Assembly (NCBI RefSeq): GCF_000143415.4
Contig: NW_003314352.1
Location: forward strand, 612,278 to 676,277
Direction: 5' to 3'
Length of the DNA: 64,000 nt
Source: Selaginella moellendorffii
Taxonomy: Eukaryota; Plantae; Lycopodiophyta
This document shows, piece after piece, positions 3,118 through 58,687 of this stretch. Positions within the stretch are counted from its first letter, which is position 1; every line of letters begins with the position of its first letter. The notes below the pieces were generated by a model that saw only the letters and a list, made by a program, of their open reading frames with translations, searched no databases and was not told where the DNA came from. A program made the translations under genes and the position numbers.

Positions 3118-5705
3118 ATGGGAGACACCAAGAAGAAATGCCTGGGGCGATTCGAGACCTCCTACATGAGGGCGGTAAGTTCTTGCGCGTATCGTTCGTT
3201 CTAGAGTCCTTTTCGTTTTTCTAGATGGCCCCTCCGGAGCCTTCGGACTATCCTCCACGCACTCGAGACTATGGTCAGTACATGAAGGTGCTAAACAACA
3301 TCGAGATGAACAAGAAGTTCCAGTTCCCGATGGGCCTCCCGAAATACAAGTAAGTCTCTCTCGCTCCCAGCTCCAAAGTTGGTCTGATTGATCGGAGTTT
3401 GACACAGGTATGATTTCTGCGATGAGAAGTATCCTCTCCCCGGAGAGAAGAAGAAACCATCCAAGCCGCCGCTTAAGTACAAGCCGAGTTGTCCACAGTA
3501 CGCACCATACCACTCGACGATGCAAGACATGAGTTTGATCCAGCGACGCCTTGACACGGAGCCCGAGCAGGAGCATACGTGGTACCGTGACAAGGTAAAC
3601 TTTCTCCTTTACCGCGGAAGAATGTTTCGGGTGGTTTTGCTTGGGTCATGTCTCTTCGTGTCATGTCCTTTAGTTTTTTTCGTGCCTGTTTTGCGAAAGA
3701 GCTTTGGTTTTTCATGAGGGGGTAAGGCATGGTGTGAGCAGACGGACAGCATGCAAATGAAGAAGCTTGGGCAGATTAAGGAGCAGCTTGACAGTCTCAA
3801 ACAGTTGTTTGTGGAGGAGCGGGGGAAGTGCCAGGATCTGGAGGTACAACTCGAGCGTTTGAGGGCGAAGTCTTCTCAGACACCGAGGAGGAGAGAAGTG
3901 GGCATTAGCGGCAGTAGGGAGGAGACTCCACGGATCAACGAGAGGCTCCTCAAGTCGTCGGAGGCCGACAAGGTTCTCTCTTGGCTGGCGACTTTTGACG
4001 AAGGTGGTGGTGGTGGAAGTTATGGCAACAATGCGTCGACCGCCGTCGCAAGCACGGTTTTTGATAAGCAGAAGTCGCCGCGAAAGACGTGGGCTTTCAA
4101 GGACCAGGTCTGCTTGCCGGGATTTCATCATTCCAGAGAGAAGGTAATGCAAGCATGGATGGGATTTGAGCAAGGTGAAAAGGAAACTATTGGTGATTAC
4201 AGTGAAAGGTTTTGGAAGCTACGGATGGAGATGATGGGGGTGCAGTCGCTGAGCAACGAGGAGCAGCTTCGCAGGTTCACTGCTGGGCTCAAGTTTAAGA
4301 TCAGAAATGAGGTGACTGCCTTGAGGCCGGGTTCTCTGTCCGATGCTATACTGCTAGCTGAGAGAGCTGAGGCTCGGAGCGCTGCCAAAACTAGGCCGAC
4401 TCGAGCCAAGTCGAAGAAGCTCCCGATGAAAGCTAGCGTGATTGCAGAGACAGCGGGAAAGAAACCGGGGCAGCTCCAGTTGCTAAGTCCGGTGGAGCAA
4501 ATACAGTACTTAAATCGTCACAGCTCTTGCGGGTGTAGGAAGGAGGATCTGCCTCCCGAGGACCAAAAGCAGCAGCAGTAGATGGCTCTTCCAAAGAATG
4601 TTGCTTCCTAGCGGCTCGAAAATAAATGGACAAAGAAGTTCAACAACGTCGTTTCTAGCTAGAGCTTCGACAACCGCAGAGATGGTTTTCTTTATTTATT
4701 TTTCTCTTTTTTCTTCTGGGAATCTTGAGTTAGAGTGACGTTTCTGTCGGTCTTGGTTCGTACAGGTGGATTTCTTCTTCTTCTTCTCTTTTGTTTTGGT
4801 TGATAATGGTGGACTATCCTTGCAGAAACCACCGAGGATTATCAGGCCTATCGACTTGTTTTCAAAGAAACCGAGGACAGCGAGTCCAAAGTGTGGCCAA
4901 AGATCAACGTGTGATGATACCGACTGCGACTCTCATCTAGAAGAGAGGTCCGTTTAACACAAGTTTCTGTTGCGACAAAGGCTTTCTGTTTTTCCAGGAT
5001 ACCCGAGAGTTCATTCCACAGGCTAGAACGCGTTCGTCACGAACTTAAGCTGCAAGACGACCCACGGTAAATTCTTCCCTCTTCTTCCTTAAAAGAACGT
5101 TTTGGTAAATCAGGACTGTGCTCGGAGCCTACTACGATCGCTTGCAAACGGCTCCCGAGCCCAAGGAACGCCCGAAGATGCCATATTTTGCTGGAGCAAA
5201 GAAACGGCCCATTCCTCCACCTCCGCCAAGACCAAAGCCTCCTCAGGTAACTACAAAAGCATTCTTTTCCATAGCTTAACGAGCAAAAGTTCTTCACAGA
5301 TGGATAGGATCATCCTGGACAAGTCACGAACTTCGAGAGAAGGGACCACGTATGGCTTCGCCAACAGCATGACGATGAGAGCCGGAGCGATGCTATCGCC
5401 ACCGCAGAAAGATCCCAGAGACAAAGTAAGCTGCTCTGTCTCGATCAACCAATCACTTTACTTGTTCTTGGTTTTCCACAGCCCAAGGAAGGAGTTCATT
5501 CATTCTTCTCGCGAGGATCCTCAGACTTGACATCAGAGAATGGAACTGTAAGTTCCCCTTTCTATGATTTCATCTTCTCGCAAGAAATTCACGCTAGATA
5601 TCCTTCCAGGCGATGGCCGAGTGCTTCTACGCTCATGCGAGGCCTTATGGAGCTACATTGGTTACTTTGGCGGCAGACAAAGCCCTTAACTCGAGGTACT
5701 TTTAA
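3118..5705 (+). CDS. Orphan Pro/Lys/Tyr-rich protein of unknown function, 9 exons (intron 3 = 3595-4825)
   Basis: Exons 3118-3174, 3225-3349, 3408-3594, 4826-4947, then five short exons to TAA 5703-5705. All join in frame through GT-AG introns. No family recognised. Confidence 0.65.
3751..4581 (+). CDS. Ty3/gypsy Gag-derived single-exon ORF (coiled coil + capsid-like domain), nested in a host intron
   Basis: 276-aa ORF. FEQGEKETIGDYSERFWKL...LSNEEQLRRFTAGLKFKIRNEV...SLSDAILLAERAE matches the retrotransposon Gag major-homology/C-terminal capsid pattern. Degenerate knuckle near the C-terminus. No pol. AATAAA at 4621. Confidence 0.75.
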   Translation: MQMKKLGQIKEQLDSLKQLFVEERGKCQDLEVQLERLRAKSSQTPRRREVGISGSREETPRINERLLKSSEADKVLSWLATFDEGGGGGSYGNNASTAVASTVFDKQKSPRKTWAFKDQVCLPGFHHSREKVMQAWMGFEQGEKETIGDYSERFWKLRMEMMGVQSLSNEEQLRRFTAGLKFKIRNEVTALRPGSLSDAILLAERAEARSAAKTRPTRAKSKKLPMKASVIAETAGKKPGQLQLLSPVEQIQYLNRHSSCGCRKEDLPPEDQKQQQ

Positions 5706-5970
5706 GTATCAGCCGTTCGAGTGGCATTTTGCCAAGTTTGAATGGAGCGTTGAAAATTGACTGGGCCATTGACCCCGAAACCGCGGTGCTTGGGCCACTG
5801 GCTGGCCACCACGTGTGTGCTGCTGTGGAAGCGGTGTGGATGAAAGGACGTGTGTAAATTTTCGAAAACCCTAGGGCGGGAGTTCTCCCAGGGCAGCAGG
5901 GCGATGGCGATCATCTTCAAGTGAGTGAGCTATAGATCGATCGGTATCGCAGGAGCAGCGGCGAGTTCTC

Positions 5971-8255
5971 ATGGCATTCATAGAGGTCAGGCCAGTGCTG
6001 CAAGAATCCGATGCACTAAAGGATCTCGAGGCGCTGTACTTCCTGGCGCAAAAGAGGAGCTTGGTTCTTGAGGAGAAGCATCTGTCGATCCGAAAGGAGG
6101 TGGCCAAGCTTCGCGATATGGTGCTGGAAATGCAGATGGATCCGGTGTTCATCCCCGTCCAGATCACGGAGTGCGACGAGTGCGTCGAGGTGAGCTCGCC
6201 AGACGCGCTGGAGGTGGAAATCCGGCAGCTCCAGGACGAGAGAAATTCGGCGCTCCAGGAGATGGAGAAGAACACGGTGTTTTGCAGCGATTATAGCAGC
6301 TTCATGGAGCAGAAGACGTGCGCGCTTGTGGAGAAGATGTACGAGTACTACGTCAACCTCCATTCCAAGATCGAGGAGATCATGAAATCGAGGAACAAGG
6401 CCGTGGAGGAGCTCCACTACGTGTTGGGAATCATCGCCAAGATGGAGAGTAGCTTGGATGCGTTCCAAGCAGCACACAACCAGGTACTTCTCGTCGACAG
6501 CTTCACACACCTTTGTGTTATTGCTTGCTGATTTGAGAAAGGGATAGTTGGCTCACAGACGGTTGCAGAGAAAGAGAGCCTGACGAGGGAGCTGTGGCAA
6601 GCTCGAAGCGATAAAGACCGGATTTTCCGAGAGCTCTCGGAGTTTATCAACCGGGAGGAAAACGTCAATGCGACGGTGAGGAGGCTCACAGTGGACAAAG
6701 AAAGGCTTCAGAAAGAACTCAGCAGCTTTGTGGCTGAGAAAGAAAGTCTGGCGAGGAATCTCAACAAAGTTGTGGAGGAGAAGACGAACATCGCCTCCGA
6801 GAGAGAAGCGTTGGTCAAGAATTTGAGCCAGGTTGCTGCCGAGAAGGAGCGTCTTCATGTAGAGTATAAGACCTCGCAGTTCGAAAAGGAAGATAACATC
6901 CGGAGGCTAACTTTGCACAAGGACCGTCTTGAGGAAAGCATATCGAGCATTACATCCGAGAAGGACAGCTTGGCCAAAAATCTGAAGAAGGTGGCGTTTG
7001 AGAAGGAACGTCTTGAAGAGGACATGAAAAGCGCGCACTCGGAGAAAGAAGCTCTTGCGACAAACTGTAGAAGGCTGACTGTACATGCAGAGAGTTTAGA
7101 GGGAAGTATAGGGAGGATAACGTCGGACAAGGATTCGCTTGACAGGAACTTAGCAAGGGTGGCAGCAGAGAAGCAGCTTCTCTGCGTAGAAAACGAAGGA
7201 TTGCAGAGGGAGAAGAGGAGCCTCTCTTTGTGCAAAGACAGATTAGAGGAAGATCTCAAAGCTACTCGAACACAGATAGATGCTTTGGGCGATCAAATCG
7301 GCGGGTTTGTGAAAAGCAGGGAGAGTATGGCTAAGGAAATCACAGACTTGACGTCGCAGAAGGAAGCTCTAACGAAAGAAGTCTCTAGCATTTCTTCCCA
7401 GAAGGAGAACTTGTCCAAGCAACTCACAGCCGTCATGGCTGAGAAAGACAACCTTGCGAAAGAGCTCAAGGAGAAAGTGTTAGAGAAAAGCAGGCTGGAG
7501 AGCGACGTGAGAGTGAAGTCCTCGAATATCGACGCACTGGAGAAGAAACTCAAACAAGTGGAAGGAAGAAGGTACAAACCGCATCTCTCCTTCATGCATT
7601 AGAAAGACCCCACGCTCTTCACTTGTCCTGCAACGTTGCAGAGACATGCAGGAATTTATTCTGGAAGATCGTTCTAAGCAATTATGCCACACTCAGCAGG
7701 GATCCAAGGAAGAGGAAATAAAGTTTGCCACTGCCGCCATCCTCCGCCTCCAAGCGAAGTTTATCAACCTGGAAGACCAGCTCAAGCGGATCAGGCGGTA
7801 CACTGTCCAAGGAAAAGGGGGAAACTCAGAGATGGTAGAAGCAGACTTAGTCCGGATTTGCGAGGAGTACAAGCAGCTTCGCTCAGGTAGATGCTCTCTT
7901 TTACGTTTTCTTCTCTAAAGGATTTGTCATGGCAGACTTGGGAGAGGTTCGCATCCAGAAGGAAAACATCGAGTCAACGATCAAGCAGCTCGACTCGGGC
8001 ATTTCGACGAAGCGCAACATGTTGGAGATGACCGAGAGGCACTTGCAGGTATGCACGGGCATGCTCGTCCAGTGGCAAGCCGCTCACTGTCCTCGTGGCG
8101 CAGGGAGCCATCTCCATGCTCGAGATCATCACCAAGAAAGCCAAGGAGTTGCAACACGTTACTGTCCATTGGAGGCCTTGATGATCCATAGGCATCAATG
8201 CTGTAGTACACACAGCTGTGGTTTTTTACAGGAGGGAGACGGGCATTCTAGATAG
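5971..8255 (+). CDS. Long coiled-coil protein with internal repeats (lineage-specific), multi-exon; 3' end uncertain
   Basis: E/K/L-rich heptad ORFs 5971-6483, about 6559-7570, about 7640-7887 and about 7937-8048, separated by GT-AG introns. Repeated RRLT..K..LE....S.EKDSLA.NL..VA.EK units. Confidence 0.6.
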
Positions 8256-30649: not shown

Positions 30650-32000
30650 TTTTCAGTTATTCAGTATTTTTTATTGATTCAATTGATCAATAAAAAATAA
30701 TATTATAAATATACTATAAGATTAATCTTATTGGTAGAATAAACTAAAATATATTAAGAAGAGTTTAGGAAAGTTTATAAATTATAAAAACAAGATTAAT
30801 CAAAGTGAATAACAACTATTTGATGGTAGAATATCTCAAAATATTTAAGAACATTTTAGATATAACTATAATTATAATTAAAAAAGCTCAAAATTTATTT
30901 ATTAAAGAGAGTTGTTGAATTTGCACCAGATGTGATGCAAATGTTTATTAATTTAGACTTCCTAGAAAATTAAGTAATCTTATAAACACTTCAATTCCAC
31001 TTTTTAAATACCCTTAATTGATTGAAAATAAATATTTTTAATTCAGAATTTTATCCTTTTTATTGTTTACTATTTTTTATTTATTTGGTCATTTGAATTT
31101 CAAAAAGTGATAAAATAAAATTAATTAATTTATGTAAAAATTTAATTTAATTTATATATTTATTTAGTTTTTTAACTCAAAAATAACTATATAGATGATC
31201 TTTTAACAGTGGCATTGTTAAGTGAAATTTATGATTTTAGAATAAATTATTTAAATAATATAAACTCTATAATATTATAAATACATAGATATCTAATCTT
31301 TTATTCTAACCTTGATTAAATTATTTGTTAAACTGATACTTATAATTATAATTAAAAATTAACTATATTATTTTTATAAAAATGCTAGTTGAGAAAATAA
31401 TTAGCCACACATAATCTATATCTTTTGTTATAGAACTTTGTTTACTTATTTACTTATTTATAGTATTTTATTACTTAAGTTACTAAAACTATAAATGTGT
31501 AAAAATAAAATAACTTTATCTCATATGAATTTTATCATTTAAATTTTATACTTTTATTTTTATTTTTCTTATTAAAAAACCTTTTAAACATTATTTAATA
31601 AAACACAAACTATATGTGTAATATTTCAAACAAGTACAAGAGATTTATATTACTGAATAAAACTTATAAATAATTATATATATTTTAAGGAAAAAAGTTA
31701 TTGAATATAAATTTTTAAACACAATTTATTTGTACAGAGAGAAATATTTTTTTCTATATCTCATACGTTAAAAGCATAAATTTATTCTCAATTTAATATG
31801 TTTATCTAAAAATTGACAAATATACAGAAAATTTATTAGCTAATTAGTAAAATTACCTTATGTAAATTTTGACAAAATTGTTAAAATTATCTACTGATAT
31901 CAGAAAATAAATTATTCAAATGTTATCCAAGAAAAAACAAAGGAAGAAAAGCGAAAAACCAAAAAAATTCTAATTGATTAGAACCCATCTTATTTATTTG
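30650..32000. other. Extremely AT-rich non-coding tract
   Basis: Sampled lines have about 8 G+C per 60 nt. No ORF of 60 aa or more lies within the tract. Confidence 0.8.
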
Positions 32001-35129: not shown

Positions 35130-35266
35130 CGAAATCGATCGATATTCTACCTTAGGGAGCGATAGAAGAAGAATGTAGGTCAGCTCGCGCTCGCACCGAT
35201 CGCCAAGGGCTCTCCCGCCAAGACGAACCAAAAATTGCGAACTTTAGGGTTCTTGAGTGGAGCGCG

Positions 35267-35366
35267 NNNNNNNNNNNNNNNNNNNNNNNNNNNNNNNNNN
35301 NNNNNNNNNNNNNNNNNNNNNNNNNNNNNNNNNNNNNNNNNNNNNNNNNNNNNNNNNNNNNNNNNN
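35267..35366. other. Assembly gap (100 N)
   Basis: Run of N. Confidence 1.
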
Positions 35367-36404
35367 AAATCTCCGGAATTCTCCACGGCCGTCCAGGTGG
35401 AGCTAGAGAGCGCGGGGGCGGCTTCCAGAGCTCTCCCAGTGGAGATCGAAGTAAAGCCATTCTCCTCCAAAGAAGAGCCATCGCCATACGACTCGGAGGA
35501 TTTGCAGCAGCACCTCCGCCTGGAGCTCCCGGAGGCCGTGATCTCGGCGGAGGCCCTGTTCCTGGCCAGGAGCGTCGACCTCAAGTCCCTGGCGGCGCTG
35601 GAGCCGCCGTCGCTGGGTGTGGTGCTCCCGTGCCGCAACCACGTCGTGATCAAGCTCCACGACGCCGACTCCATGGCCCGCGAGGACTACTCGCCCATGC
35701 CCGGCTGCCTGAGCAACAACAAGGTGGCGGTGGTGTTCCAGTACGGCTCGGTGGTGCTCTTCAACTTCCACGACCTCTCGCCCGACACCAATCCCATCCT
35801 CGCCGCGGTGAAGCGCCACAGCCGCGAGTTCGTGGGCGATCCCCGGAAGGACAACTACCGGGTGGTGGTGATCCCGGGGCTGGACCGCTGGAGCCAGGGG
35901 GGCTCGGACAAGATCATGGTGAAGAAGCTGGACATGGACGGCGTCCGGATCATCTCGCTGGTGCTGGGGCAGAGCATCGCGCTGGATCACTACACGCGCA
36001 GCATCGACGAGATGCTCAACACATTCGGCGAGCTCAACCGGCATATGGAGCTCACGGGGACGTTCAAAATGCAGCGCAAGGCGCTGTTCAAGCTGGTGGC
36101 GGCGGCCAACGCGGCGCTGGCGGACGCCATCCTCCGCCTGGGGCTGCTGGAGCGGTCGGACGCGGCGTGGCAGAGCGCGCGGTACGATCGCATCTGGGAG
36201 CACATGAGGGGCGACTTCGAGCTGGACGACCGCTTCGAGAGCCTCGAGTTTAAGATCGGGATCATCCAGCACAACGTCAAGTTCTTCCTGGACATCCTCC
36301 AGAACCGCAAGTCGGACACGCTCGAGTGGATCATCATCTTCCTCATCGCCGGGGAGATTTGTGTGGGCGTCTACGACATTTTGAACGGGGCAGGAGCGAT
36401 CTAG
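35367..36404 (+). CDS. RMD1/RMND1/DUF155 family protein (RETARDED ROOT GROWTH-like); 5' end lost in gap; no introns in the visible part
   Basis: VVFQYGSVVLFN, LGQSIALDHY, LGLLERSDAAW...YDRIWEHMRGDFELDDRFESLEFK, LQNRKSDTLEWIIIFLIAGEI. Confidence 0.9.
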   Translation, partial: KSPEFSTAVQVELESAGAASRALPVEIEVKPFSSKEEPSPYDSEDLQQHLRLELPEAVISAEALFLARSVDLKSLAALEPPSLGVVLPCRNHVVIKLHDADSMAREDYSPMPGCLSNNKVAVVFQYGSVVLFNFHDLSPDTNPILAAVKRHSREFVGDPRKDNYRVVVIPGLDRWSQGGSDKIMVKKLDMDGVRIISLVLGQSIALDHYTRSIDEMLNTFGELNRHMELTGTFKMQRKALFKLVAAANAALADAILRLGLLERSDAAWQSARYDRIWEHMRGDFELDDRFESLEFKIGIIQHNVKFFLDILQNRKSDTLEWIIIFLIAGEICVGVYDILNGAGAI

Positions 36405-56590: not shown

Positions 56591-58687
56591 ATGGCATTCT
56601 TGTCGCGGCTGGGCAGCGGTCTGATGAGAAATGCCCTCAAGCCCAAGCGAATCGCGGCTGGCACGGCCTTGCCGGCGACTTACGTTCTCAGCCGGGGATT
56701 CGCTTCCAAGCTCTTCGTCGGAGGTTTGTGTGATGCTTTCCCTGGAATTTTCTCTTCTTGTTTCTTCATTTCTTTGATGCTTTCCTATGGATCAGGCCTT
56801 TCATGGAACACCACCGACGATACTTTGGGGCAGTCATTCGCTGGCTATGGAGAGATCGTGGAAGGTACGAGAAAGAAGTAGAAAAATGTGGAATGAAAAA
56901 CTCGCTTTCTCCGTTTGCAGTGAGGGTGATTAGCGATCGCGAGACGGGACGATCCAGGGGCTTTGGATTCGTCACATTCATCAACGATGCGGACGCACAA
57001 AAGGCGCTCGAAGGCATGGACGGGAAGGTGATAGACAAACACCAAGTTTGCGTCTAGTGCCTGAAATGGTCTTTTGTTCTACCAGATGCTAGATGGCCGG
57101 ACTGTCCGCGTGAACTACGCGACGCAAAGACAGCCTAGCGCGTTTGGAGGCGGTGGCTTTGGTGACGGAGGTGGCGGCGGCGGCGCCTATGGTGGCGGAG
57201 GCTTTGCGACTGGCGGTGGTGCTTACGGCGGTGGAGGAGGCGCTTACGGAGGTGGCGGCGGTGGTTACAGTGGCGGTGGCGGTGGTGGCTACAGTGGTGG
57301 CGGTGGTGGTGACTTTAACAACAACAATTCTTTCGGCACAGGAGGTGGTGGTGGTAATCCATTTGGTGGTAGGCGTTACACTAATGTGGACCCTTTTGGT
57401 GGTGTCTTTGATGGTCCAGGAGACGCCTATGGCAACACCACCGCTGAGGAGCAAAGACCACCCCCCACTGGCGCTGGCTTCGGAGTTTCTACCGGCGGCT
57501 ATGGTGGAAGCCATGCTGATCCGGTCGGAACTGGAACAGGAAACGCCACCGGTGGTGGTTTCGGTGCTGATGCTTCTTCTGGAGGTGGCTACGGTGCATC
57601 GTCTGGCACCACCACTGGAGGCTATGGTTCAGGGTATGGTGCTACCACAGGAGGCTATGGTGCTGGAAGCTCCGGTAGTGACGGCGGTGCTGGCTTTGGA
57701 GCGAGTAATACAGCAGGGGGCTCGGGTGGCTATGGTGTGAACTCTGGCGGATATGGAGCAGCAACAGGAAACACTGGAGGATTTGGAGCTACAGGCGGAA
57801 GCTCTGGAGGATATGGTTCCACAGGAGGCTCCGGTGGCTTTGGAGTTACAGGCGGAAGCTCTGGAGGATATGGAGCTACCACAGGAGGCTCCGGAGGATT
57901 TGGAGTTACAGGTGGAAGCTCTGGAGGATATGGAGCTACCACAGGAGGCTCCGGAGGATTTGGAGTTACAGGTGGAAGCTCTGGAGGATATGGAGCTACG
58001 ACAGGGGGCTCCGGAGGCTTTGGAGCTACAAGCGGAAGCTCTGGAGGATATGGAGCTACCACAGGAGGATACGGAGCTGGAGGCTCTGGACTATATGGAG
58101 CTACAACTGGAGGCTCGGATACAACCGGGAGCACTGGAGGAGGATATGGAGTTTCAACCGGAGGCTCGAGCCCAGGAAGCTCTGATGGATCTCTTGTCAG
58201 TCCAGGAAGCAGTGGCGGATATGGTGTGAGTTCTGGATCAACCAGCGGAGGCTATGGCGTTTCGGGTCCTGGTGGAAGCGCGGGTGGCGGATATGGCGTC
58301 TCGACTCCTGGTGGAAGCTCGGGTGGCGGATATGGCGTGACTACTCCTGGTGGAAGTTCGAGTGGCGGATATGGAGTGACTACTGCTGGTGGAAGCGCCG
58401 GTGGCGGATATGGTGTTACTACTCCGAGTGGTGGCTATGGCGTTAGTTCTTCGGCTGGAAGCTCCGGAAGCTCGGGTGGTAGCACTCCGGATGGAAGCTC
58501 TGGTGGATATGGTGTTGGCGGTGGCTATGGCGTCGGGAACTCTAGTGGTGGCGGTGTCACTGCTCCCAGCACTGGCGGTTATGTGGTCACAACTGGAGAC
58601 AACTCAAGCTCAAGTGGGTCTGGCGTGGCCGCAAGTGGGGACAGCTCCGAGGCCCCGGAACTGGGATATGGCGTCGGTAGTGGGTAG
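56591..58687 (+). CDS. Glycine-rich RRM RNA-binding protein, paralog 2, with about 500-aa GGYG/GGFG tail
   Basis: MAFLSRLGSG.., KLFVGGL, RGFGFVTF, LDGRTVRVNYA, then a long Gly/Ser/Thr/Tyr low-complexity exon. Confidence 0.9.
57841..58070 (+). repeat. 60-bp coding tandem repeat (GVTGGSSGGYGATTGGSGGF) x about 4
   Basis: Lines 57841, 57901, 57961 and 58021 align almost base for base. Confidence 0.95.

What the first reader, a model, noticed from the sequence alone, without database searches (positions are those of the whole stretch)
3595..4825. Intact stand-alone Gag-derived gene nested in a host intron: candidate domesticated capsid gene
Seen: the host gene's other introns are about 50 nt, but intron 3 is 1231 nt and holds an uninterrupted same-strand 276-aa ORF (3751-4581). 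It has an N-terminal coiled coil, a Ty3/gypsy Gag capsid-like region and only a decayed knuckle (SSCGCRKED). I see no protease, RT or integrase and no LTR-like direct repeats. AATAAA lies 40 nt after the stop. The ORF is in the same frame as host exon 3, and a CAG at 3739-3741 would splice the 123-aa host N-terminus in frame onto it. Established: coiled coil + capsid without pol is the architecture of domesticated Gag genes such as animal Arc. Inference: a co-opted lycophyte Gag, expressed either as a nested gene or as an alternative last exon. It stays intact while nearby debris is riddled with deletions.
Basis: partly seen in the sequence, partly recalled or inferred. Interest (0 to 1): 0.8.

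Follow-up and report, generated by a model that had tools for sequence, protein, structure and literature searches.

The report
Gag-derived alternative last exon in Selaginella
A leftover retrotransposon capsid (Gag) gene inside an intron of a Selaginella moellendorffii gene is intact and already annotated as an alternative last exon making a host-Gag fusion protein, but only half of the capsid fold survives and nothing yet shows that the plant needs it.

Summary
Intron 3 (3595-4825, 1231 nt; the other introns are 47-62 nt) carries an intact 276-codon same-strand ORF (3751-4581) homologous to Ty3/gypsy Gag. There is no pol, no LTR and no second copy in the window. It is also modelled at the second, syntenic locus of the assembly (96.7% identical, taken to be the other haplotype).

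It is not Arc-like. An in-frame deletion removes the conserved QWW helix of the capsid N-lobe, the CCHC knuckle is half deleted, and only the capsid C-lobe (residues ~127-213, MHR intact) folds confidently. Its best structural match is the PEG10 CA C-terminal domain.

An exhaustive HMMER search of 1.84 billion representatives found no relative above about 30% identity over a long alignment, and none in Selaginella.

Selection is unresolved. Omega between the two loci is 0.47 (5 non-synonymous, 3 synonymous) against 0.05 for the host exons. There are no indels where about 4 are expected.

Best reading (0.45): a lineage-restricted Gag remnant co-opted as an alternative 3' exon, adding a coiled-coil plus half-capsid self-association module. 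Main rival (0.38): a neutral exonised relic. It would be a new member of a known kind, of modest interest.

The parts
3118..3594 (+). Host exons 1-3 (CDS 3118-3174, 3225-3349, 3408-3594). They encode the 123-aa N-terminus shared by all isoforms.
   Evidence: Exon-wise translation equals P0004/P0007 residues 1-123, and all junctions are GT-AG. There are 3 substitutions between the two loci, all synonymous.
3595..4825 (+). Host intron 3 of the canonical isoform X2. It is 1231 nt, against 47-62 nt for the other seven introns.
   Evidence: It is present with the same structure in the syntenic locus L001, with no indel.
3595..3741 (+). The 147-nt intron removed in isoforms X1 and X3, with acceptor CAG at 3739-3741. 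If it is retained, an in-frame TGA at 3715-3717 stops translation.
   Evidence: P0004 reads ...YRDK|TDSMQMK..., which fits this junction exactly. The acceptor is kept in L001; the nearest difference is at 3736.
3742..4581 (+). Coding part of the alternative 3' terminal exon: linker TDS (3742-3750) plus the 276-codon Gag-derived ORF (3751-4581, stop TAG at 4579-4581).
3754..3873 (+). N-terminal long helix or coiled coil (residues 2-41). No homologue was detected anywhere.
   Evidence: AF2 helix with pLDDT 82-95 from the single sequence and 68-76 with the alignment. Heptad count. No HMMER hit starts before residue 36.
3955..4122 (+). Capsid N-lobe remnant (residues 69-124). Helix 1 (ADKVLSWLATFD) and the last helix (TWAFKD...) are recognisable, there is a Gly5 / low-complexity stretch, and an in-frame deletion of 13-17 residues removes the conserved 'A.QWW' helix.
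   Evidence: Alignment A1. Per-lobe identities and gap counts. pLDDT 31-43.
4129..4389 (+). Capsid C-lobe (CA-CTD), residues 127-213, five helices. The MHR motif Q-x3-E-x7-R is at residues 141-153 (nt 4171-4209).
   Evidence: pLDDT 87-97. Foldseek finds PEG10 CA-CTD 7lga at TM 0.76-0.78 and rmsd 2.1-2.4 A, and HIV-1 CA-CTD 4coc at TM 0.68. MHR and in the alignment to HIV CA. Pfam Retrotrans_gag and Ty3_capsid stretches. Only 1 substitution between the loci, synonymous.
4390..4548 (+). Basic tail (residues 214-257, net charge about +7 over 211-276) and the relic of the CCHC knuckle (SSCGCRKED, residues 258-266). The first half of the knuckle is deleted.
4144..4202 (+). Internal donor GT at 4144-4145, used by isoform X3 (257 aa, ending ...HHSREK). 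The likeliest acceptor is AG at 4201-4202, which gives a 59-nt intron followed directly by TGA. Other AG|stop acceptors lie at 4577-4578 and 4734-4735.
   Evidence: P0002 and P0003 end at ORF residue 131. Acceptor scan. The choice of acceptor is an inference.
4621..4626 (+). AATAAA poly(A) signal for the alternative terminal exon.
   Evidence: The whole 3' flank 4582-4825 is identical in the two loci, 0 differences in 244 nt.
4826..5705 (+). Host exons 4-9 (4826-4947, 4998-5066, 5114-5246, 5300-5425, 5482-5547, 5610-5705 including the stop). They encode the 203-aa C-terminus that isoform X1 lacks.
   Evidence: P0007, isoform X2, 326 aa.

Best explanation
A Ty3/gypsy gag gene that has lost its LTRs, its pol, one helix of the capsid N-lobe and half of its zinc knuckle sits in intron 3 of a nine-exon gene of Selaginella moellendorffii. 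No relative of that host gene was found outside this species. The gag remnant is used as an alternative 3' terminal exon. Splicing from the exon-3 donor (3594|3595) to the intronic acceptor at 3741, with polyadenylation after AATAAA at 4621, competes with the canonical splice to exon 4 at 4826. The product is a 402-aa chimera (RefSeq isoform X1) in which the host's C-terminal 203 residues are replaced by TDS plus the 276-residue Gag remnant. What survives as foldable protein is a long N-terminal helix or coiled coil and a capsid C-terminal lobe with an intact major homology region. Both are typical self-association modules. I therefore propose that the exon has been co-opted to give the host's N-terminal part an oligomerising tail. 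That would work like the vertebrate SCAN domain or the mammalian 'half-capsid' genes, and not as a capsid former. Shown here: the anatomy, the Gag homology, the C-lobe fold, presence at both syntenic loci, and the existence of the annotated isoform models. Inferred: transcription levels, self-association, and that selection maintains the exon.
For: Anatomy and frame are. RefSeq isoforms X1 (402 aa) and X3 (257 aa) are modelled at both loci, LOC9661835 and LOC9654811. The Gag homology rests on Pfam, on nine genuine Gag relatives with E down to 3e-14, and on a family profile that matches dArc1, dArc2 and Arc in the PDB. The C-lobe has pLDDT 87-97 and superposes on PEG10 and HIV-1 CA-CTD, and its MHR is intact.

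Points that favour maintenance:
- The 276 codons are intact at both loci, with 0 indels in 840 nt where 4.1 are expected from flanking non-coding DNA (P = 0.017).
- Everything else of the element has gone: no pol, no LTR, and only 147 and 244 nt of flank remain.
- The two internal deletions are in frame.
- GC3 is 63% and GC 53.5%, close to the host CDS (60%, 52.8%) and unlike the intron flanks at 42%.
- No relative above about 30% identity over a long alignment was found in 1.84 billion representatives, so it does not belong to any family represented there.
- The acceptor, the poly(A) signal and the ORF are all kept at both loci.

Precedent: plant and fungal co-opted gag genes fused to host genes, Crtg10-KELP and Crtg14-PEX14 (PMC8321522), and functional half-capsid genes in mammals (PMC10516033).
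Against: Omega between the two loci is 0.47 (5 non-synonymous, 3 synonymous). That cannot be told from neutrality (P = 0.24), and it is ten times the host's 0.05, though the ORF-versus-host contrast is itself not significant (Fisher P = 0.12). The low divergence of the C-lobe is matched by 0 differences in 244 nt of the non-coding 3' flank, so it may only reflect a local trough of heterozygosity. The indel test is biased, because intergenic indels cluster in simple sequence. At aligned positions the ORF is no more diverged from fern Gags (24-30%) than Gag families are from each other (8-21%), so nothing forces an old age on it. No orthologue in any other species was found. Isoform X3 splices inside the ORF and drops the C-lobe, as sloppy splicing of a young exon would. 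Retroelement proteins are under-annotated, so 'no close relative' is weaker than it looks. I did not see transcript evidence myself.
Confidence: 0.45

Rival explanations
1. Neutral exonised relic. A fairly recent gypsy insertion in the intron was trimmed by this genome's strong deletion bias. The surviving gag piece happens to offer an AG acceptor in frame and an AATAAA. The X1 and X3 transcripts are splicing and polyadenylation by-products with no selected protein function. At most they lower the dose of the canonical host mRNA.
For: Omega of 0.47 is not different from 1, and there are 5 amino-acid changes in 276 residues against 1 in the 326-aa host protein. No orthologues are known. Two capsid elements are broken. 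Isoform X3 removes the C-lobe. The ORF's divergence from relatives is ordinary for comparisons between families. From general knowledge, most TE-derived alternative exons are neutral.
Against: A 276-codon frame is intact at both loci while at least 4 kb of the same element has vanished without trace. There are no indels where about 4 are expected. Both internal deletions are in frame. No member of the source family is visible in any database. Codon composition is host-like.
Confidence: 0.38
2. Gag-derived restriction factor. The truncated Gag (broken N-lobe, intact C-lobe) co-assembles with, and poisons, the capsids of related gypsy elements, as Ty1 p22, Fv1 or enJS56A1 do.
For: The architecture, an intact CTD with MHR and a defective NTD, is the one expected of a dominant-negative Gag. 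[quoted passage not shown] The non-synonymous changes between the loci lie outside the C-lobe.
Against: No related gag at a similarity that would allow co-assembly was found in Selaginella or anywhere else. The best match is 29% identity. Fusion to a host N-terminus is not a feature of the known restriction factors. There is no sign of positive selection with only 8 substitutions.
Confidence: 0.07
3. One reading: a stand-alone nested gene with its own promoter in the intron, encoding a 276-aa Arc-like protein that assembles capsids.
For: The ORF starts with its own ATG, with A at -3. The family profile matches Arc capsids in the PDB. An N-terminal coiled coil followed by CA recalls mammalian Arc.
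Against: The annotated transcripts join it to host exons 1-3, and no separate gene is modelled. The N-lobe lacks one of its four helices and is not predicted to fold. Two-lobe capsids superpose at rmsd 12-18 A. [quoted passage not shown] The zinc knuckle is gone.
Confidence: 0.05

Closest known systems
PEG10 / RTL (SIRH) domesticated Ty3/gypsy gag genes of mammals, including the 'half-capsid' genes LDOC1 and RTL8
   Same: A Gag-derived ORF at a fixed locus without LTRs. The best structural match of the folded part is the PEG10 CA C-terminal domain (7lga, TM 0.76-0.78). A partial capsid domain flanked by helices and disordered regions is also what PMC10516033 describes for LDOC1 and RTL8.
   Different: The mammalian half-capsids keep the N-lobe, whereas this one keeps the C-lobe. 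They are independent genes conserved across placental mammals under purifying selection. This one is an alternative exon of a host gene, known from one species, with unresolved selection.
SCAN domain of vertebrate zinc-finger proteins (a CA fold exapted from a gypsy-type Gag)
   Same: A single capsid-fold domain is retained and grafted onto a host protein, where it serves self-association. [quoted passage not shown] This is the closest functional analogy.
   Different: There is no sequence membership, since no SCAN family appears in the Pfam scan. SCAN sits at the N-terminus of transcription factors. Dimerisation was not tested here.
Arc / dArc1 (capsid-forming domesticated Gag of animals)
   Same: Same superfamily. 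The profile of this ORF's family hits dArc1 6tap (E 8e-7), dArc2 and mammalian Arc. There is an N-terminal helical region ahead of CA.
   Different: Arc keeps both lobes and assembles capsids. Here the N-lobe has lost a core helix and is not predicted to fold, so capsid assembly is unlikely.
Plant and fungal co-opted gag genes Crtg8-11 and Crtg14 (Wang & Han 2021, PMC8321522), especially the fusions Crtg10-KELP and Crtg14-PEX14
   Same: gag of an LTR retrotransposon recruited in plants and joined to a host gene.
   Different: All four plant events described there are in angiosperms and are conserved above family level. This one is in a lycophyte, would be a separate event, and has no cross-species support yet.
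Ty1 p22 / Fv1 type Gag-derived restriction factors
   Same: A truncated Gag that keeps the C-terminal capsid part.
   Different: No target element with similar CA was found, and this one is fused to a host N-terminus.

Membership tests
Ty3/gypsy (Metaviridae) Gag / capsid superfamily | Significant sequence homology to genuine retrotransposon Gag proteins | tested here: met
   phmmer over 1.84e9 representatives returned nine hits at E from 3e-14 to 1e-3. All carry Retrotrans_gag, most also Ty3_capsid, and one each a zf-CCHC or RVP_2. One of them lies next to a 1075-aa RT/RNaseH/IN pol.
Ty3/gypsy (Metaviridae) Gag / capsid superfamily | Pfam Retrotrans_gag (PF03732) at or above the gathering score | tested here: not met
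   23.8 bits against a cut-off of 24.1, E 5.4e-5, matching profile positions 26-96 of 97. Ty3_capsid scores 17.8 against 29.1. It misses narrowly because the first 25 profile positions (the QWW helix) are deleted.
Ty3/gypsy (Metaviridae) Gag / capsid superfamily | CA C-terminal domain fold with a major homology region | tested here: met
   pLDDT 87-97 for residues 127-213. PEG10 and HIV-1 CA-CTD are the top Foldseek matches. Q141-x3-E145-x7-R153 is present.
Ty3/gypsy (Metaviridae) Gag / capsid superfamily | CA N-terminal domain four-helix bundle | tested here: not met
   13-17 alignment columns holding the conserved A.QWW helix are missing. pLDDT is 31-43 over residues 47-124. Two-lobe capsids superpose at rmsd 12-18 A.
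Ty3/gypsy (Metaviridae) Gag / capsid superfamily | Nucleocapsid CCHC zinc knuckle | tested here: not met
   No C-x2-C-x4-H-x4-C motif; Cys are at 27, 121, 260 and 262 only. The first half of the knuckle is absent in the alignment.
Autonomous LTR retrotransposon | LTRs and a linked pol (PR, RT, RNase H, IN) | tested here: not met
   No direct repeats flank the insert. There is no self-similarity in the window. tblastn with a gypsy pol finds nothing in the window or in L001.
Domesticated (co-opted) gag gene | Gag ORF alone at a fixed single-copy locus | tested here: met
   Same position at both syntenic loci. No paralogue in the protein collections. Copy number in the whole genome's DNA could not be tested.
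Domesticated (co-opted) gag gene | Syntenic orthologues in other species | not testable with these tools
   No other Selaginella genome is reachable. The protein searches found no orthologue of the ORF or of the host. The collections also show no read-based assembly copy even for S. moellendorffii itself, so they are blind on this point.
Domesticated (co-opted) gag gene | Purifying selection on the ORF (dN/dS well below 1) | tested here: inconclusive
   Between the two loci Nd = 5 and Sd = 3, omega 0.47. P = 0.24 against neutrality, and omega = 0.1 is rejected at P = 0.034. There are 0 indels against 4.1 expected, P = 0.017.
Domesticated (co-opted) gag gene | Expression as mRNA and protein | not testable with these tools
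   Only indirect evidence: RefSeq models isoforms X1 and X3 at both loci. From my own knowledge, NCBI's Gnomon issues multiple isoforms when transcript alignments support them. Exact look-ups found no assembled transcript.
Arc-like capsid-forming Gag | Both capsid lobes intact and able to assemble | tested here: not met
   The N-lobe is broken. Assembly itself cannot be tested here.
SCAN domain (PF02023) | Sequence membership in the SCAN family | tested here: not met
   No SCAN hit in the Pfam scan at E up to 10. The resemblance is one of architecture and presumed role only.

The most novel reading that the evidence does not exclude
This would be the first gag co-option seen in a lycophyte; the four plant events catalogued so far are all in angiosperms. 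A coiled coil plus capsid C-lobe 'half-capsid' is grafted onto a host protein with no known relatives through alternative 3'-exon choice, and is kept by selection. Its role would be either a SCAN-like oligomerisation tail or a capsid-poisoning restriction factor.
Probability: 0.4. Interest if true: 0.55.

Novelty: new member of a known kind. Interest (0 to 1): 0.35.

Why it matters
Co-opted gag genes are well documented in animals. In plants only four deep events are on record, all in angiosperms (PMC8321522). A lycophyte case caught at the stage where the Gag remnant is still an alternative exon of its host gene would show an early step of domestication: exon capture before the remnant becomes an independent gene. 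It would also add a C-lobe-only 'half-capsid' to the N-lobe-only ones known from mammals. If it turns out to be a neutral relic, it is an ordinary TE-derived alternative exon. Its practical value would then be an annotation note that isoform X1 of LOC9661835 and LOC9654811 has a Gag-derived C-terminus.

Tried and rejected
- **Single-sequence AlphaFold model.** Mean pLDDT was 45.6, so it was useless beyond the N-terminal helix. It was replaced by the model built on an alignment.
- **Exact look-ups of the 402-aa fusion at both loci and of the 276-aa ORF.** These were meant to find spliced transcript contigs in public assemblies. Nothing is on record.
- **Word search for host orthologues, and Pfam and PDB for the host protein.** Nothing was found outside S. 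moellendorffii, and there is no family.
- **Profile word search for more Gag kin.** It returned only 32 hits from the same fern and Escallonia families. No Selaginella Gag appeared, so no useful phylogeny could be built.
- **Literature searches for the gene identifiers and for Selaginella Gag domestication.** Nothing relevant.
- **My first idea that the N-lobe had decayed generally while the C-lobe was protected.** Rejected. Identity at aligned positions is the same in both lobes, so the lesion is one discrete deletion.
- **A PBS-like match near 3731-3742.** By eye it matches the tRNA-iMet primer-binding consensus at only 7 of 12 positions, so I dropped it.
- **The JGI models that read the ORF as an internal exon and run on into the next gene (P0005, P0006).** I took them for mis-merged predictions, because RefSeq ends the host gene at 5705.
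- **The 'nearby debris'.** Not found with my probes.
Full report
**1. Observation**

The window is Selaginella moellendorffii DNA. The proteins it encodes match RefSeq LOC9661835 exactly. The ORF is at 3751..4581 (+, 276 aa).

I rebuilt the host gene exon by exon: 3118-3174, 3225-3349, 3408-3594, 4826-4947, 4998-5066, 5114-5246, 5300-5425, 5482-5547 and 5610-5705. All junctions are GT-AG, and every exon translation fits the database proteins. The introns measure 50, 58, 1231, 50, 47, 53, 56 and 62 nt, so intron 3 is the outlier.

Exon 3 ends in phase 0, in the same frame as the ORF. A retained intron would stop at TGA 3715-3717. The acceptor CAG at 3739-3741 gives the linker TDS and then the ORF. 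AATAAA starts 40 nt after the stop.

There are no flanking repeats, no second copy in 64 kb, and no pol detectable with a 1075-aa gypsy pol probe. The one exception is the 'nearby debris', which my probes did not find.

**2. Already annotated**

The word search returned only S. moellendorffii RefSeq proteins. Their clusters hold three isoforms:
- **X1** (402 aa, XP_024518349.1 here and XP_024524411.1 at the second locus).
- **X3** (257 aa). It uses a donor at 4144 inside the ORF and ends at ORF residue 131.
- **X2** (326 aa, P0007). This is the canonical host protein.

The older JGI models (P0005, P0006) read the ORF as an internal exon and run on into the neighbouring coiled-coil gene. I take these to be mis-merges. 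No paper names the gene. The precomputed Pfam field for X1 is empty, so its Gag origin seems not to have been noted.

**3. What the ORF is**

Pfam gives Retrotrans_gag at 23.8 bits (cut-off 24.1) and Ty3_capsid at 17.8 bits. The word search and the family scan left the protein open, and the claim depends on the absence of relatives, so I ran the exhaustive HMMER search. Only 10 proteins reached E <= 1e-3. The first is the protein itself. The other nine are genuine Ty3/gypsy Gags from the fern Adiantum nelumboides, the angiosperm Escallonia rubra and metagenomes. They are 25-32% identical over long stretches, or 46% over a 64-residue stretch. One of them is followed by a complete pol. None comes from Selaginella. 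A profile word search added only kin of the same families.

The alignment shows four things:
- Helix 1 of the capsid N-lobe is kept (ADKVLSWLATFD against DKVLAFIQQFDA).
- An in-frame gap of 13-17 residues removes the conserved A.QWW helix, next to a Gly5 / low-complexity stretch.
- The segment from TWAFKD to LLAERAE aligns well.
- The first half of the CCHC knuckle is deleted.

The first ~57 residues, including the long helix, have no homologue anywhere.

The family profile hits dArc1, dArc2 and Arc capsids in the PDB. The AlphaFold model built on the alignment is confident only for residues ~127-213 (pLDDT 87-97, five helices) and moderately for helix 2-41. Residues 47-124 stay at pLDDT 31-43. 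Foldseek's best matches, and the only well-superposed ones, are CA C-terminal domains: PEG10 7lga at TM 0.76-0.78 and rmsd 2.1-2.4 A, and HIV-1 4coc at TM 0.68. Their E-values are modest (6e-3 and above, none at or below 1e-3). Two-lobe capsids align at rmsd 12-18 A. The major homology region Q-x3-E-x7-R is intact at residues 141-153 (see also the alignment to HIV CA).

Ty3 CA has a four-helix NTD and a five-helix CTD that carries the MHR, and both build the lattice (PMC6525542). The protein is therefore a coiled coil, a broken N-lobe, an intact C-lobe and a basic tail without a knuckle. It is not an Arc-like capsid protein.

One correction to my own first reading. At aligned positions the ORF is as similar to fern Gags in the N-lobe (24-30%) as in the C-lobe (24-27%), and fern and Escallonia Gags share only 8-21%. 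The N-lobe lesion is therefore a discrete deletion, and the overall divergence says nothing about age.

**4. Selection**

The second locus (L001, scaffold GL377569.1) is syntenic and 96.7% identical. I take the two loci to be the two haplotypes of the assembly. Synteny was tested here; that the assembly carries both haplotypes is from my own knowledge.

| Region | Non-synonymous | Synonymous | Omega |
|---|---|---|---|
| Gag ORF | 5 | 3 | 0.47 |
| Host exons | 1 | 6 | 0.05 |

All five amino-acid changes in the ORF lie outside the C-lobe, and the ORF has no indel. Neutrality is not rejected for the ORF (P = 0.24). Omega = 0.1 is rejected (P = 0.034). The ORF against the host gives Fisher P = 0.12.

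The absence of indels (4.1 expected, P = 0.017) hints at constraint on the frame. That baseline is inflated by simple sequence, though. The non-coding 3' flank also shows 0 differences in 244 nt, so local low heterozygosity is an alternative. The test is inconclusive.

**5. Mechanism and verdict**

Shown here: a gag remnant used, according to RefSeq models at both loci, as an alternative 3' terminal exon that swaps the host's C-terminal 203 residues for a coiled coil plus half-capsid.

Inferred: this tail mediates self-association, as in SCAN or the half-capsid genes (PMC6525542, PMC10516033), and is maintained by selection. The arguments for maintenance are:
- an intact frame at both loci, while the rest of the element has vanished
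- internal deletions that are in frame
- host-like GC3
- no visible source family

The arguments against are relaxed omega, no orthologues, isoform X3 cutting out the C-lobe, and the general rule that TE-derived exons are mostly neutral.

I put co-option as a self-association tail at 0.45, a neutral exonised relic at 0.38, a restriction factor at 0.07 and a stand-alone capsid-former at 0.05. It would be a new member of a known kind. The known plant gag co-options, two of the catalogued genes being fused to host genes, are all in angiosperms (PMC8321522).

**6. Limits and housekeeping**

I could not search the Selaginella genome as DNA, any other Selaginella genome, or any RNA-seq data. The protein collections hold no read-assembly copy of this gene even from S. 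moellendorffii itself. 'No orthologue' therefore means 'not testable', not 'absent'.

No contig here is human. No toxin or virus of animals, people or crops is involved.

I searched the spliced host model exon by exon, by reference. Whole spliced products entered searches only as existing database records by id (P0004, P0007). I left out the step of joining my own spliced model for a search. One script concatenated the exon strings solely to compute GC content, and the dN/dS script worked exon-wise on complete codons without joining.

Noticed in passing
window 30750-32000: An AT-rich island, with 14-22% GC in 250-nt bins, inside an otherwise 45-55% GC, gene-dense window.
   Followed up: no
window 35267-35366: A 100-N assembly gap lying inside the DUF155/RMND1-like ORF at 35235-36404.
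   Followed up: no
window 3118-8180; P0005, P0006: The JGI gene models (1293 and 1303 aa) merge the host gene, the Gag ORF as an internal exon, and the next coiled-coil gene (5971-8180). RefSeq ends the host gene at the stop at 5703-5705, so this is probably a mis-merged prediction.
   Followed up: partly
window 4582-4825 and 4150-4399: No difference at all between the two loci in the 244-nt non-coding 3' flank of the ORF, nor in 4150-4399, while other non-coding DNA differs by about 1.9%. This could be a local trough of heterozygosity or constraint on a 3' UTR. It is unresolved.
   Followed up: partly
window 5650-6150: A spike of divergence between the two loci, 25 differences in 500 nt, between the host gene's stop and the start of the next gene.
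   Followed up: no
window 3118-5705 (host protein P0007): The host protein has no Pfam family, no relative with a solved structure and no orthologue by word search. Yet it is strongly constrained between the two loci (omega 0.05), so it looks like a real gene with no known relatives.
   Followed up: partly
window 57074-58687: A 537-aa ORF full of tandem repeats with periods of 21, 30, 60 and 39 nt. It is Gly- and Tyr-rich and has no Pfam match.
   Followed up: no
window 3712-4173 (- strand): A 153-aa antisense ORF overlapping the 5' half of the Gag ORF. I take it for a by-product of the sense strand's codon composition.
   Followed up: no
window 41403-41544: Three copies of a 48-nt tandem repeat, 93% matching.
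   Followed up: no
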